64,000 bases of DNA from positions 15,066,001 to 15,130,000 of the forward strand of contig NC_047025.1 of the NCBI RefSeq assembly GCF_902652985.1. The letters run 5' to 3'. Made by a program: the position numbers and the translations under genes. This document shows, one piece after another, positions 53-34,780 of this stretch (positions are counted from its first letter, which is position 1; every line of letters begins with the position of its first letter). Under the pieces are notes generated by a model that was not told the origin of the DNA, made no database searches, and saw nothing but the letters and a program-made list of their open reading frames with translations. The stretch is from Pecten maximus (taxonomy: Eukaryota).

Positions 53-2076
53 ATGTCCGTCCAGGGAGAGCTGTACGAAGATTCCTGGATTCTATATCGT
101 GTCCTGGACAGGACGATGGGGAGCCGAGAAATGGTTGCCGTCAGGAGGAAGCTGACACTTGTACGTGAGCAATTAAGTAACTGTGATAAAACACAATCAG
201 AAACAATTAACATAGGAAGTTCAGCAGAAGGAATTAAGATGAAGGGCTCGGACCAAGATCAAATGCTAATTCACAACTCTGTGGTAGTTATATGTCCTGA
301 CCGACAAAGCAGTATCACACCAGATATTGCTAATAAAACGGTATTTATTATGAGAGATACCGACAGCCGACCTGGCTATGTAAAATTGCAGCTGAAAGGA
401 CGGACGTGCACTTCAGACTTGTTTAATTCGATTGTACCTGTTGGAGATGTACACTTTATATCAAGTGAAATGTTTGCACGGTCACTATCAGATCAAGTAT
501 GTGATGTATTCAGGACTACCGTAAACACTCGTGGAGCAGCTACTACTACGAGTAAAATAACTTATACAGAATCAGATATCGATTTAGTGCGTGTGTTCGT
601 TTGTACTAGTTGGCCAAGCGAGAGCAACGAGTGGGTGAGCAGACCTCGATTGTATAACTGGCCGGATAAATGTTTGAGAGATCAGATAGTACAAGGTGGT
701 TGTCATCTTGTCCCTGTAGGAGATAAAACGTCAGCCGACACGTTACTACAATGGAGAATTTCATTCGCGACTGCGGAACGCAAACTCGTTCATTCTCTCA
801 GTCATGTCCAGTTCCTAGTGTACTGTCTTCTCAAGTACCCTTTCAAACAGATATCTGGGAAGTTGAAACAAATATATGGGGATACGGATATTATCTCGTC
901 ATATATTATCAAAACAACTATACTCCATGCAGTAGAAAACACACCTTTTTCTTTATGGGAAGAAAAGAATACAATTCTTTGTTTCATGCTGTGTTTAAAT
1001 ATTTTGGCCACGTGGGTGAGAGCAGGATATTGTCCTAATTACTTTATATACAAGAATAATATGTTCCTTGGGAAAGTTCATGGTCACAATCAACAAAAAC
1101 TCCTCCGTTTACTTGTTAAACTCCGTGATATGACATGGCGTTGTCTATCAATAGGAACATTCTTCCAATTATCTATAGGAAAGTATATCCAGAGAGTGAA
1201 AAATGGGGCCTGTGAAATAGTACTGCCTACACCAGCACAATCAGAAAGAGAAACTGATTTCACAATATTCGTACGGTCCTTCGTTTTGTTTCGTGCAACT
1301 GATGTACTGCCCGCTTTGAAACTTCTGAGCAAATCAATGTCGGACATGGATGAATTAATAGCTTACTTCAATACAGTACATGCACTCTCTTTTAAAGGGA
1401 TGGAGGCATTTGAGAAACAAGCTTCCCTCGGAGGAAACAAACAGAAGTATAAATCTCTTAGGAAATGTAAGAAGTTTATTTCACCACTTGCCGTAACTTG
1501 TACAAGTCCAGGTCTACTGACGTTGGCAACCTATCACTACCAGACTGGGAATTACTTGAAAACACTGGAAATGTGTGGACACCTTATTTCCTCGTGGAAA
1601 ATTTTCGTTGATTGTATGAGTGAAAAGGATCATGAAAGATACGAACATCTCTACTGTGGGCATGGGTATAGTCTTCTACACAAATTTCAGCAAGCATGTG
1701 TATCATACATGTTTTTGACACAACCATATCCAAATTTCTGTCCAGTCCATTTACAACAAGAGCTAACGAACGTCAGTAGTATAAAACTGCTAATCCCACC
1801 ACTCCCTTATGCCGTGTTCCTGACCTTCCTGTGTTACCATGAGCTTAACGATACAAGAAGACGTGACGCAGCACTGATCGAACTTCGGGCCATGAAGTAT
1901 GATAAGAACCAGGGAGGAAGTAAATACTGGTTGTCCACAACCTCTTAGGAATCTGTTACGAAATGGTCGGTGACCTACGCAGTGCTCTCAGGGAATACAA
2001 GGACTCTCTGAGTGGTACAAGAGGTTATCAACATCAAAATCCTGCTATGGAGAGGATAGAACGACTGGAGCATTAA
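53..2076 (+). pseudogene. Mab-21/cGAS-like receptor (cGLR) with TPR-like C-terminus, copy 1; frameshifted near the 3' end (ORF 53-1948)
   Basis: NTase motif GSSAEG..SDQD plus third acidic residue in SDIDLV; Mab-21 motifs HLVPVG, WRISFATAERKL, SSYIIKT, CPNYFI..NNMF. A 1-nt deletion at ~1930 (tgg-ttgtcc vs tggattgtcc in copies 2/3) shifts the frame; the homologous frame continues VHNLLGICYEMVGD...AMERIERLEH to a stop at 2074-2076. Pyrimidine-rich acceptor AG ends at 31, and an in-frame TGA at 38-40 supports ATG 53 as the start. Confidence 0.85.
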
Positions 2077-3595
2077 CTATAACGACAAAACTTGATTTTC
2101 TATATTTTTGTTAGATACTAGGCACACGATCAACATCACTGAATCGTACTGCGTGTAATAATTCAACATGATGACCTTGTATCGCTGATTCGAAAAATAA
2201 ATTGTTAAAGCTTACAGTCCAAAATAAAAGAACTTCCGATTGAGGTTTAAAAATACGAAGTTTCAGTAATTAGAAATCTTTTCGGAGATGTACTCCTATG
2301 ATTACATTAGGTCCCATTCATCGTATCTAAGGAAGTGCCGACATTTTAGTTTGTGCATGGCTTGGAGACGCATACCCGGAAGCGAACCCGTGCACACTAT
2401 GTATTAATGTGAAAGAATAACAAAATAAATCCCCCGGGGGACAGAAGGAAATTAGGAGGGGGCAGATTGTAAGGAAGACTTAACATAGAGGAACCAAGAC
2501 GTGCTGAAGGAGGCGTACAGCATGTAAAGTGTTAAGAATTCGCACAGTATGGTTTGGAAATTATACGTGGTTCTGACAAATGAAAAAAGAGACATTAAGG
2601 GAATATGGTGTCGAAGATGAATTTCAATTTATTATTTCATGTTTCTTTCTTATTGTTTGAAGCTACGAGAAGTTGTTTAATATGTATATGATACCGATGA
2701 TTCGGATAACTCCAAGTTTTGAACTTAACTTTAACACGGAGTTTGATGAGGACAAAAGACTTGAGCCCAGTGATTTGTTATATATGTGAAATATTATTGT
2801 AAGATAGCTAATGGGGTTGGCATGGATCTATCTCTACCAAAAAGATTTTTTCCAACTCTCCATCAGGTCTAAGCTGCTCGATCCCAGTATAATTATGTAA
2901 TAACATTTATTATATGATCGGTATGTAGCACTATCACTCATTGGTCCTAATCAGATCACATGCCATCAATTATTTCCTTGGCCATACCCCCATGACATCA
3001 CCGAGGAGTCAATATATTTCGTCAGGTCCGTTGAAAGTATGTCATATATGCTGAAAGGTATTTTTAGCAGATGTTAATAAAACTTTCCATGGACCTGGCG
3101 AAACGTTATATTCAACTTCCGGTTATATGATGAGGTATTTTAGAGGAACTTTTATTTAGTTTTGTCTTTAAATAAGTACAATAACGTAACTGCAGACTTT
3201 AGTTTCGGAAAATCCATGGTTTTAGGGACCTGCCCTGAATAATATCCACCTCGGCCTTCGGCCTCGGGAAATATTGTCAAGGTAAGGTCCGTAGAACAAT
3301 GGAATATTCTCAACAAAAGTCTGGATTTGTAATGATGTTGTTCCATCTTGTTTGAGAAAGACAAAACCAAGCCGATGACAGCCTTTATCATTTGTATAGT
3401 TTATGTAGCTGTGCCGGTATGGTACCTGTATTCTTACATGTTTCGCCCTTGGATTTATTAGTTATAGCCAAATAGTTCAGATCTGGATTTTGGATGTTTA
3501 CGTGTCAAACTGTATGCTTTTTATACTATATTTGAGTCAATGTCTTTTTCGATTAAGTCAAATTGATCTAAGTAAATATGTTGTATAATTAATAA

Positions 3596-3830
3596 AATAC
3601 TGCAATATATTTTATTTATGAAAGTCTGCAATGTAATTACTTTATGAAATACTGCAATGTAATTATGTTATGAAAAACTGCAATGTTATTACTTTATGAA
3701 AGCCATGCCATAACTACAAAGTAAGTACTTTATAAAAAAAAACTGCAATGTGTCTACTTTTAGAAAGATAACAATGTATTCTTCGTGAAATACTGCAATG
3801 CATTTACTTAATGAAAGAACACAATGTATG
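3596..3830. repeat. Degenerate ~27-bp minisatellite (atgaaatactgcaatgtaattacttt-like)
   Basis: Recurrent ctgcaatgt/tttatgaaa units. Confidence 0.7.
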
Positions 3831-33695: not shown

Positions 33696-33815
33696 ATATA
33701 TATTGTATATATACTATATAGCCTCGTATTACTATATCAAATGGAGAAGCTCCATTTTATATAGTAATACGAGGTTATATAGTATATATATACAATATAT
33801 AATTTCTTATCCCAA
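33696..33815. mobile_element. Paralogous fold-back palindrome 3' of cGLR copy 3 (left arm shortened)
   Basis: Same arms and loop as 19950-20130, without the 40-bp duplication. Confidence 0.75.
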
Positions 33816-33922
33816 TTACTTGTGATCAAAAAGTATTTGAATGAATTACGTTGACAAAGTTTCGACAACACGAATATTATAAGGAAATTGATAAATGGGA
33901 TCTGTAGTGTATAGCCATCACC

Positions 33923-34780
33923 ATTCCTTGATTCTAGGTCATGTCCTGGATATGATGATACGGGGCCGGAAGATGGTAGCCATCAGGAGGAAGCCAATAC
34001 TTGTACATGTACATGAACAATTAAGAACACATATTTTTGTTTCATGATGCGTTTAAATATTTTGGCCACGTGGGTGAATGCGAAGCATTGCCCTAATTAC
34101 TTTATTAAATTGAACAATATGTTCCTTTGTGAAAGTTCATGGCGAAATCTACAAGAACTCCTTTGTTTACTTGTGGAGCTCCAGGATATGGCACGGGATT
34201 GTGTATCGATTGGAACAAGCTTCAAACAGTACTCTATAGAAAATGTCAGTATTGTTAGAAATCCACTGTATCTTTTCACTCAGAAAAAGAATATGATTTG
34301 AGAATATTCCCGGAGTCTATTTAATTTTAATTTTAGCGCCGATGTACTTCCAAAAGTGTATAATACCACTAATCTCGGAATGTACAAGTAGATGACTACT
34401 GACGCTGTCATCCCATCACTACCAGCCTGGGAATTATACATCAGAATTATGCGTATACATGCTCTCATCATGGACATTTCCGCTGGTGGTGCTCCTAGTG
34501 TAACGGTTCGAGACAGTTATGAACAGCTTTCCTGTGGGTCGGGTATACTCTTCTAAACAAATATCACAGGCATGTATAGCAAGTATTGACCGTTCTGTCT
34601 ATACCCGTTACAGCCGGAGCTAACAAACCCAACGGGAGGATTCATGTACTTGATCTCCCTCTGCTCTCCTATGATGTGTTCCTCACGTTCCTGTCTCACC
34701 ATGAACTTGTTGACACCAGACGACTTAATACAGCACTAATCCACCATCGGGACGTGAAATGTGACGAAATGCGGGGAGGG
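33923..34780 (+). pseudogene. Degenerate cGLR relic lacking the NTase core (paralogue of 20233-21062)
   Basis: ORF 34044 LNILATWVNAKHCPNYFIKLNNMFL and ORF 34586 LSYDVFLTFLSHHELVDTRR match the cGLR; same deletion junction. Confidence 0.85.

What the first reader, a model, noticed from the sequence alone, without database searches (positions are those of the whole stretch)
53..34780. Birth-and-death tandem array of cGAS-like receptors fused to TPR-like helical repeats
Seen: five related loci in the same orientation (three near-full, two relics). Each full copy is one coding exon with an intact-looking NTase signature (GSxAEG...SDxD plus a third Asp in SDxDxV), Mab-21 helical motifs, and ~280 aa of C-terminal helical/TPR-like sequence. 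Established: Mab-21-fold cGLRs make cyclic dinucleotides that signal via STING, and the family is expanded in bivalves. Inference: a lineage-specific innate-immune sensor cluster in which the TPR-like tail, rather than a cGAS-type DNA-binding surface, may recognise the ligand or autoinhibit. I know of no ligand or product assignment for this architecture.
Basis: partly seen in the sequence, partly recalled or inferred. Interest (0 to 1): 0.8.

Follow-up and report, generated by a model that had tools for sequence, protein, structure and literature searches.

The report
Scallop cGAS-like receptor gene array
The window holds the last three members, plus two decayed remnants, of an eight-gene tandem array in the great scallop that encodes cGAS-like immune sensor enzymes with a helical TPR-like tail, a protein design already catalogued in animals but with no known trigger or product.

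Summary
Three same-strand ORFs (53-1948, 17675-19684, 31422-33443) encode 631, 669 and 673 aa proteins that are 79-83% identical. Two decayed fragments of the same family follow copies 2 and 3. All three pass Pfam Mab-21 and Mab-21_C, match cGAS/cGLR structures, and keep the G-S, D-x-D and third-Asp active site, which is invariant in 40 relatives. An AlphaFold model (pLDDT 87.5) has a cGAS-fold core. Residues ~395-673 form a helical repeat that matches only TPR proteins, and weakly.

The genome is Pecten maximus by named hits. The array runs a further 125 kb upstream: eight loci, three intact, copy 1 shortened by a one-base deletion, four pseudogenes. Spliced RNA contigs show a non-coding 5' exon joined 21 nt before the ATG.

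The architecture is not scallop-specific. Full-length homologues occur in mussels and oysters, and at least 68 long-ORF Mab-21 loci occur in this genome. Li et al. 2023 already list cGLR-TPR fusions and bivalve expansions. They screened a 56%-identical Yesso scallop member and did not flag it as active.

This is a new member of a known kind with an orphan ligand and product. The role of the tail remains inference.

The parts
32..1948 (+). Copy 1 coding exon. The splice acceptor AG is at 30-31 and the ORF is 53-1948 (631 aa). A one-base deletion near 1933 shifts the frame at codon 628.
1930..2067 (+). Out-of-frame remainder of the copy 1 C-terminus. It is 70% identical to residues 628-673 of copy 3 and holds the terminal TPR motif.
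15184..15295 (+). Non-coding 5' exon of copy 2. Its 3' end is at 15295, followed by donor GTGAGT. Its 5' end is not defined; the start given is only the start of the block homologous to the copy 3 unit.
17654..19684 (+). Copy 2 coding exon. The acceptor AG is at 17652-17653 and the ORF is 17675-19684 (669 aa), intact.
20226..21077 (+). Relic B, a decayed fragment of a family member. Pieces match residues 8-37, 306-423 and 469-628, in several frames with stops. The NTase core is missing.
26561..26672 (+). Non-coding 5' exon of copy 3. Its 3' end is at 26672, followed by donor GTGAGT. Its 5' end is not defined.
31401..33443 (+). Copy 3 coding exon. The acceptor AG is at 31399-31400, where RNA contigs break to a 5' exon. 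The ORF is 31422-33443 (673 aa), intact.
33916..34795 (+). Relic C, the counterpart of relic B. The two relic regions are about 95% identical in DNA.
14028..22682 (+). Duplicated unit B: 5' exon, intron, copy 2, relic and downstream sequence.
26165..37012 (+). Duplicated unit C: 5' exon, intron, copy 3, relic and downstream sequence. It is 76-95% identical to unit B, block by block.

Best explanation
The region is the distal end of a ~158 kb, eight-locus, same-strand tandem array on Pecten maximus chromosome-scale contig C11. The genes encode cGAS-like receptors (cGLRs). Each has a Mab-21/cGAS nucleotidyltransferase core (about residues 1-394) with a complete catalytic triad, followed by a ~280 aa TPR-like helical repeat. 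Each is made from a short non-coding 5' exon spliced to one coding exon. The array grows by unequal duplication of units of ~9-14 kb and loses members to frameshifts, stops and deletions. Most likely mechanism (inferred): the intact members, copies 2 and 3, are latent nucleotidyltransferases. On binding an unidentified ligand they would make a cyclic di- or oligonucleotide that is read by the scallop's STING proteins. The tail is predicted to form one rigid body with the core, and would act as the ligand- or partner-binding or regulatory module, standing in for the zinc-thumb DNA platform that cGAS has and these proteins lack. Shown here: fold, catalytic residues, architecture, array structure, transcription with splicing, and family distribution. 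Inferred: enzymatic activity, product, STING coupling, tail function and immune role. The confidence given (0.6) is for the whole statement; it is about 0.95 for the identity and array structure and about 0.5 for the enzymatic mechanism.
For: Family and fold. Pfam Mab-21 and Mab-21_C are above cut-off in all three copies. The best PDB sequence hits are a cGAS-like receptor 1 (8gjy, 1.8e-14) and cGAS. The AlphaFold model has pLDDT 87.5 and pTM 0.86. Foldseek places cGAS and MB21D2 on top (E about 1e-11, TM 0.64-0.72 on the target).

Active site. G55, S56, D67, D69 and D178 are invariant in 40 members of 37-83% identity, as are R236, S238, S284, Y285 and K288. These align with the cGAS W-R-L-S-F-S and S-Y-H-x-K segments.

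Tail. TPR_1, TPR_2 or TPR_12 are hit in 19-21 of 22 tails, best E 6e-8. Every structural match is a TPR protein.

Selection for open frames. With 5-6% random substitutions only 0.5-1% of simulated copies keep the 673-codon frame free of stops, yet copies 2 and 3, L002 and L004 are intact.

Transcription. Contigs of runs X5 and X7 cover the coding exon but not the 450 nt upstream. One breaks exactly at the acceptor at 31401 and continues into letters that match the exon ending at 26672 and 15295, each followed by GTGAGT.

STING. Two STING_LBD matches are above cut-off in this genome. Li et al. count 3 STING and 61 cGLR genes in P. maximus.

Array. Eight C11 loci lie between 14,941,104 and 15,099,440, all on the + strand, and form one clade with 100/100 support.
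Against: No enzymatic activity, product or ligand is known for any member. The one family member in the screen of Li et al. (sample 83) has no 'active' note with or without poly(I:C) and dsDNA. dN/dS among the array's intact copies is high: 0.6-0.7 overall and 0.7-1.0 in residues 1-250. Half of the array is dead, so relaxed constraint on this clade is possible. The TPR assignment rests on one Pfam-detectable motif, which is below the gathering score in the window's own copies, and on structural Z-scores of 9-11. The tool itself rates those as non-specific for helical repeats. The evidence for RNA is from assembled contigs of runs whose RNA nature is a guess apart from the splice. The spliced contig differs by 1-2 letters from the window's own 5' exons, so it may come from an allele or a close paralogue.
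Confidence: 0.6

Rival explanations
1. The proteins signal without making a nucleotide. The Mab-21 core and TPR-like tail would act as a protein scaffold that binds and activates a kinase or another adaptor, as reported for shrimp Mab21 proteins and IKK-epsilon.
For: Shrimp LvMab21-1, -2 and -3 bind neither dsDNA nor dsRNA and make no cGAMP, yet they activate IKK-epsilon directly (PMC12928593). TPR-type repeats are typical protein-protein modules, and the structural matches include LGN, Hop/Sti1, and the Rap and PlcR peptide binders. The screened scallop member was not flagged as active.
Against: The catalytic G-S, D-x-D and D residues and the nucleotide-pocket residues are invariant across 40 members down to 37% identity. 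That is hard to explain without catalysis. Inactivity in a screen that offered only dsDNA and dsRNA is what an orphan-ligand enzyme would show, and most of the 140 proteins tested were inactive.
Confidence: 0.15
2. The copies in this window are on their way out. This young clade would be under relaxed constraint, and its intact ORFs would be recently duplicated genes that no longer matter to the animal.
For: Four of the eight array loci are pseudogenes and copy 1 has a fresh one-base deletion. dN/dS is 0.6-0.7 overall and reaches about 1 in the N-terminal lobe for some pairs.
Against: Chance survival of a 673-codon frame after 5-6% divergence is about 0.5-1% per copy, before counting indels, yet four copies are intact. 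The Mab-21_C lobe still shows dN/dS of 0.2-0.4. The catalytic residues are kept and the locus or a near-identical one is transcribed and spliced. High dN/dS with retained frames is also the pattern of diversifying immune receptors.
Confidence: 0.2
3. The apparent array is an assembly artefact in which uncollapsed haplotypes are laid side by side.
For: The copy 1 region is 98.6% identical over 5.4 kb to C11:14,970,616-14,976,000, which lies 95 kb upstream. It is also 98.2% identical to the unplaced scaffold C376, which is collinear with the window. Part of the higher-order structure could therefore be haplotypic.
Against: Copies 1, 2 and 3 differ by 10-12% in DNA, have different flanks and spacing, and carry different lesions. 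Three near-identical versions of copy 1 (the window copy, the L005 locus at C11:14,970,668 and C376) cannot all be alleles of one diploid locus. Related arrays and more than 100 Mab-21 loci are spread over many contigs.
Confidence: 0.04

Closest known systems
cGLR-TPR fusion proteins catalogued by Li et al. 2023 (bioRxiv 10.1101/2023.02.22.529553; Cell 2023)
   Same: Both have a cGAS-like receptor core with a predicted active site, fused to tetratricopeptide-type repeats. Both show strong gene expansion in bivalves. A family member (M. yessoensis LOC110458748, 56% identical to copy 3) is in that paper's screen list.
   Different: That paper took domains from NCBI conserved-domain metadata and reports 87% of cGLRs as single-domain. 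Only about 7 of 120 relatives here carry a precomputed TPR Pfam hit, so most members of this family may have been counted as single-domain. I could not check this because the stored tables are cut. No ligand, product or tail function is given there.
Solved cGAS-like receptor 1 (PDB 8gjy). By recollection this is one of the oyster or coral cGLR1 enzymes of Li et al.; the tool gives no species.
   Same: It is the best sequence match among solved structures (E 1.8e-14 over residues 155-339). It shares the core motifs around the third Asp, the W-x-x-S-F segment and the C-P-x-Y-F-I segment.
   Different: The solved chain has 376 residues and ends about 30 residues after the Mab-21_C lobe, so it has no tail. 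The oyster cGLR1 enzymes of that study respond to dsDNA and make 2'3'-cUA. Nothing comparable is known here.
Human and mouse cGAS
   Same: The fold is the same (Foldseek E about 1e-11). The catalytic G-S, [DE]-x-D and D positions and the base-stacking S-Y-x-x-K segment are shared.
   Different: The zinc-thumb insertion is absent: the alignment needs a gap in the query at the cGAS H-x-C-C-x-C-C insertion. There is no disordered basic N-terminus. A 280 aa helical tail is present instead. The core pI ranges from 6.3 to 8.6, against the >8.5 that Li et al. quote for nucleic-acid-sensing cGLRs.
Human MB21D2 (PDB 7lt1), an orphan cGLR
   Same: It is the second-best structural match (E 1.9e-11). Like these proteins it has a complete active site and no known ligand.
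   Different: MB21D2 is a single-copy vertebrate gene without a TPR-like tail.
Shrimp LvMab21-1, -2 and -3 (PMC12928593)
   Same: They are invertebrate Mab-21 family proteins with an immune role and no response to dsDNA or dsRNA.
   Different: They are reported to act by binding IKK-epsilon rather than by making a nucleotide. No tail of this kind is described in the abstract. I made no sequence comparison.

Membership tests
cGAS-like receptors (cGLR; Mab-21/cGAS branch of the CD-NTase superfamily) | Mab-21/cGAS bilobed nucleotidyltransferase fold | tested here: met
   Pfam PF03281 and PF20266 are above cut-off in all three copies. Foldseek puts cGAS and MB21D2 on top, E about 1e-11, with target TM-scores of 0.64-0.72.
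cGAS-like receptors (cGLR; Mab-21/cGAS branch of the CD-NTase superfamily) | Complete active site: G-S loop, [DE]-x-[DE] pair and third acidic residue | tested here: met
   G55, S56, D67, D69 and D178 are present in copies 1-3 and invariant in 40 relatives. D178 aligns with the cGAS V-D-I aspartate.
cGAS-like receptors (cGLR; Mab-21/cGAS branch of the CD-NTase superfamily) | [quoted passage not shown] | not testable with these tools
   The only indirect information is that M. yessoensis family member sample 83 in Li et al. has an empty 'Note' field, the field where active enzymes are named.
cGAS-like receptors (cGLR; Mab-21/cGAS branch of the CD-NTase superfamily) | A STING-type receptor in the same genome | tested here: met
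   Two STING_LBD (PF15009) matches are above cut-off on C14 and C2. Li et al. count 3 STING genes in P. maximus. Coupling to these cGLRs was not tested.
cGLR-TPR fusion architecture | Tetratricopeptide repeats appended to the cGLR core in one polypeptide | tested here: inconclusive
   One terminal TPR motif (residues ~627-654) is detected. In the window's copies it is below the Pfam cut-off (best E 0.0017), and in paralogous tails it reaches 6e-8. The rest of the tail matches only TPR proteins, but weakly: Foldseek E 0.007-0.09 and VIA Z 9-11, which is inside the range the tool calls non-specific for helical repeats. Two small beta-hairpins interrupt the helices.
Tandem multigene family evolving by birth and death | Same-strand paralogues from local duplication, with intact, damaged and dead members together | tested here: met
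   There are eight C11 loci, all on the + strand, forming one clade (100/100). Three are intact, one is truncated and four are pseudogenes. Older relics were copied along with the unit.

The most novel reading that the evidence does not exclude
The TPR-like tail is the sensor of a non-nucleic-acid ligand, such as a pathogen peptide or protein or a host guardee, and it gates cyclic-nucleotide synthesis by the cGLR core. The dominant cGLR type of scallops, mussels and oysters would then be a protein- or peptide-triggered second-messenger synthase. It would be largely overlooked, because domain censuses miss the tail and the published screen offered only dsDNA and dsRNA as ligands.
Probability: 0.2. 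Interest if true: 0.75.

Novelty: new member of a known kind. Interest (0 to 1): 0.4.

Why it matters
cGLRs are a large family of animal pattern-recognition receptors, and most of them have no known ligand. Bivalves hold the largest repertoires.

This window shows, at base-pair level, how one such repertoire turns over. It also points to a tail-bearing subfamily with at least 68 long-ORF loci in this genome, full-length homologues in oysters and mussels, and an invariant active site. That subfamily is a well-defined target for finding a new class of cGLR ligand.

The practical value is modest. It gives intact, expressed candidates (copies 2 and 3) and natural tail-damaged variants (copy 1) for biochemistry. 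It also cautions that domain censuses may undercount the tail. It does not reveal a new kind of system.

Tried and rejected
- **Foldseek on the tail alone against PDB.** Nothing reached E <= 0.001, so I rejected any specific TPR family assignment.
- **Joints in RNA run X11** (33625 to 34132 and 34612 to 34668). The ends are non-canonical and the contig has about 5% mismatches. I read them as deletions in a paralogue's downstream region, not as introns.
- **The second loose end at 31403.** It has no match in the window at up to 3 mismatches. By eye it resembles the same 5' exon and probably comes from a variant copy.
- **A full dot-plot of the whole array.** Only alternate 10 kb pieces upstream of the window could be compared.
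- **Literature.** A 'cGLR' search hit on an oyster paper was a false match to CgLRSAM1. No paper besides Li et al. links cGLR with tetratricopeptide repeats in animals.
- **Li et al. tables.** Tables S1, S2 and S4 are stored cut. I could not see how the window's proteins or their tails are classified there. Sequence cells in Table S3 appear cut at about 400 letters, so I cannot say whether sample 83 was expressed with its tail.
- **The search of earlier findings.** By place and by words it returned nothing.
- **Steps not run.** No complex-prediction job was sent, because the full-length model already treats core and tail as one body and model coordinates cannot be inspected here. The 5' exon and the coding exon were not joined into a spliced model for any search; all protein searches used the single coding exon by reference. 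The N run at 45794-46293 was left as it is.
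Full report
**What is in the sequence**

The + strand carries three long ORFs at 53-1948 (631 aa), 17675-19684 (669 aa) and 31422-33443 (673 aa). tblastn with copy 3 shows that they are 79-83% identical to each other. It also finds two more same-strand fragments at 20226-21077 and 33916-34795. These match only residues 8-37, 306-423 and 469-628, at 34-56% identity, in several frames and with stops. Against 276 collected family proteins the fragments are about 50% identical to any member. 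They are therefore old, decayed copies that have lost the catalytic core.

A self-comparison shows a duplicated unit: 14028-22682 matches 26165-37012, with 90% identity over the gene and about 95% over the relic and downstream sequence. Copy 1 shares only positions 1-2100 with the others. Each relic was therefore copied together with its gene.

One detail was missed. Copy 1 lacks one base near 1933 (C-T-G-G-T-T-G where the other copies have C-T-G-G-A-T-T-G). This shifts the frame at codon 628, and the last 46 codons continue out of frame to 2067.

**What the proteins are**

- **Sequence families.** All three copies pass the Pfam gathering scores for Mab-21 (PF03281) and Mab-21_C (PF20266). Among solved structures the best sequence matches are a cGAS-like receptor 1 (8gjy, E 1.8e-14), many cGAS entries (about 1e-12) and MB21D2.
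- **Active site.** In an alignment of 40 relatives of 37-83% identity, G55, S56, G60, D67, D69 and D178 are invariant. So are R236, S238, S284, Y285 and K288. In the alignment to cGAS, D178 falls on the V-D-I aspartate. R236 and S238 fall on the W-R-L-S-F-S segment, and S284, Y285 and K288 fall on the S-Y-H-V-K segment. From general knowledge of cGAS, these are the metal-binding triad and nucleotide-pocket residues.
- **Zinc thumb.** The zinc-thumb insertion of cGAS is absent; the query needs a gap at that place in the alignment.
- **Fold.** The AlphaFold model of copy 3 is confident (pLDDT 87.5, pTM 0.86). Foldseek ranks cGAS and MB21D2 first (E about 1e-11, TM 0.64-0.72 on the target).

**The tail**

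From about residue 345 to 672 the model is helical, with two short beta-hairpins. Modelled alone, residues 350-394 are disordered (pLDDT below 50). In the full-length model they score about 90.

Evidence on the tail's fold is consistent but weak:

- **Pfam, window copies.** Only one TPR motif is detected (residues ~627-654), below cut-off.
- **Pfam, paralogous tails.** TPR_1 or TPR_2 hit 21 of 22 tails from this genome, with a best E of 6e-8.
- **Foldseek.** Only weak matches (E 0.007-0.09), all to TPR proteins.
- **Exhaustive structural search.** Z of 9-11, again only to TPR proteins such as LGN/Pins, Hop/Sti1, OGT, APC subunits, and Rap, PlcR and AimR. The tool warns that such Z-scores are common for helical repeats.

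'TPR-like helical repeat' is a fair name. Membership of any particular TPR family is not shown.

**Gene structure and expression**

Contigs of two runs guessed to be RNA (X5, X7) lie on the coding exon of copy 3 but not on the 450 nt before it. A DNA run covers everything.

One X5 contig stops matching exactly at 31401, just after a pyrimidine tract and AG. Its preceding 20 letters match 26653-26672 with 2 mismatches and 15276-15295 with 1 mismatch, and both sites are followed by GTGAGT. This is a splice from a conserved non-coding 5' exon to the coding exon, 21 nt before the ATG. The introns are about 4.7 kb (copy 3) and 2.4 kb (copy 2). The acceptor is conserved in all three copies.

The mismatches mean that the transcript may come from an allele or a very close paralogue. 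Contigs cannot give expression levels.

**Where it comes from and how far the array extends**

Named hits and contig sizes identify Pecten maximus. The window is C11:15,066,001-15,130,000. The array continues upstream. All eight loci are on the + strand:

| Locus on C11 | State |
|---|---|
| 14,941,104 | internal duplication and frameshift |
| 14,970,668 | in-frame stop |
| 14,992,380 | frameshift and stop |
| 15,012,220 | intact, 684 aa |
| 15,031,042 | frameshift and stop |
| Copy 1 (window) | frameshift at codon 628, 631 aa |
| Copy 2 (window) | intact, 669 aa |
| Copy 3 (window) | intact, 673 aa |

The eight loci form one clade (100/100 support) with a star-like interior. No further copy lies downstream in the window.

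The copy 1 region is 98.6% identical over 5.4 kb to C11:14,970,616-14,976,000. It is also 98.2% identical to the start of the unplaced scaffold C376. That scaffold is collinear with the window but only 89-91% identical at copies 2 and 3. C376 may be a divergent haplotype or another block, and this needs long reads. The three copies in the window differ by 10-12% and cannot be haplotypes of one another.

**Selection**

Among the intact copies dN/dS varies by region:

| Region | dN/dS |
|---|---|
| Overall | 0.6-0.7 |
| Residues 1-250 | 0.7-1.0 |
| Mab-21_C lobe (251-349) | 0.2-0.4 |
| Tail | 0.55-0.8 |

Variable sites cluster at residues 41-55, 84-95, 141-176, 385-412, 518-530, 555-562 and 574-580. 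The tail is therefore not the fastest-evolving part.

A simulation shows that only 0.5-1% of sequences keep a stop-free 673-codon frame after 5-6% random substitution. The four intact copies have therefore been kept open by selection for most of their history. High dN/dS with retained frames fits either diversifying selection or recent relaxation.

**Distribution of the family**

- **This genome.** A protein search gives 69 scored matches, most covering the whole 673 residues in one open frame. A Mab-21_C search gives 121 matches. By my count of the printed table, 68 lie in open frames of at least 600 aa, and about nine lie in frames of ~375-380 aa.
- **Other scallops.** Relatives of 37-61% identity and the same length fill the genomes of Argopecten, Mizuhopecten and Ylistrum.
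- **Beyond scallops.** A profile of the tail alone finds 736 cluster representatives, many of 640-700 aa with the tail at the C-terminus. Named ones include Mytilus coruscus, M. edulis, M. galloprovincialis and Crassostrea virginica. Copy 3 aligns end to end with the oyster protein (28% identity) and the mussel protein (26%), including the G-S and D-x-D motifs and the terminal TPR.

The architecture is therefore old within pteriomorph bivalves. Only this local clade is specific to P. maximus.

**What is already known**

Li et al. 2023 describe cGLRs as a large receptor family. They note extreme expansion in bivalves, list TPR fusions among the domain architectures, and count 61 cGLR and 3 STING genes in P. 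maximus. Their 140-protein screen includes M. yessoensis LOC110458748 as sample 83. This is P0029 here, 56% identical to copy 3 over its full length. Its 'Note' field, where active enzymes are named, is empty. The screen offered only poly(I:C) and a 45 bp dsDNA as ligands, and the authors state that many cGLRs appear inactive for lack of the right ligand.

They relied on NCBI domain metadata and report 87% of cGLRs as single-domain. Only about 7 of the 120 listed relatives carry a precomputed TPR hit. The tail-bearing class is therefore probably under-counted, but the stored tables are cut and I could not verify this.

The calculated pI is 8.3-8.9 for the three proteins, 6.3 for the core of copy 3, and 6.2-8.8 across the family. 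That is mostly below the >8.5 that Li et al. associate with nucleic-acid sensing. This is a weak hint against a classical nucleic-acid groove.

**Mechanism**

The best-supported reading is a latent nucleotidyltransferase whose product is read by STING. Two STING_LBD loci are present in the genome. In this reading the tail is a binding or regulatory module built into one rigid body with the core.

The main rival is non-enzymatic scaffolding, as reported for shrimp Mab21 proteins. The invariant active site argues against it. A second rival is that this young clade is decaying. An assembly artefact is unlikely for the copies in the window.

**Verdict**

The system belongs to a known kind, cGLR with a TPR-type tail in a bivalve expansion, and its ligand and product are still unknown. 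Interest is moderate.

Noticed in passing
window 40272-44064: A 157 bp satellite with 24 copies, 91% matching. It is G+C-richer (43-46%) than the surroundings and has strongly negative GC skew.
   Followed up: no
window 56934-58621: A 21 bp minisatellite with 80 copies. It creates an artefactual 613 aa ORF on the - strand (56907-58748) made of heptad repeats in two frames (S-K-S-D-N-V-P, then Q-T-M-S-P-V-S). There is no sign that it is a gene.
   Followed up: partly
window 45794-46293: An assembly gap of 500 N, left untouched. A second 500 N gap lies upstream of the array at C11:14,931,907-14,932,406 (L031:5907-6406).
   Followed up: no
G000:C376 (45.6 kb unplaced scaffold; L004, L008, L023, L038-L040): This scaffold carries three family genes collinear with the window. 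It is 98% identical at copy 1 but only 89-91% identical at copies 2 and 3. It is either a deeply divergent haplotype or a further paralogous block.
   Followed up: partly
G000:C11:14,970,616-14,976,000 (L033) versus window 1-5380: A 98.6% identical duplicate of the copy 1 region lies 95 kb upstream. It has a different lesion: an in-frame stop near codon 203 and no frameshift at 628. This points to a recent higher-order duplication of the array.
   Followed up: partly
window 33488-34924 (RNA run X11, contig 10): An 876 nt contig from a labelled RNA-seq library lies across the downstream and relic region. It has two skips (506 and 55 nt, non-canonical ends) and about 5% mismatches. It is probably a transcript of a paralogue's 3' region, which suggests that relic sequence is carried in 3' UTRs or read-through RNA.
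   Followed up: no
window 9612-9848; 24695-25175; 38176-38603; 48508-49152; 53914-54412: Further tandem repeats lie between and beyond the genes: a 117 bp unit in 2 copies at 100% identity, and units of 22, 54, 49 and 26 bp. No other convincing protein-coding ORF was seen in 34.8-64 kb.
   Followed up: no
G000:C3:37,482,833-37,507,197: A separate cluster of four Mab-21_C matches lies in open frames of ~375-380 aa. These are short, tail-less Mab-21/cGLR genes, in contrast with the long tail-bearing class.
   Followed up: no
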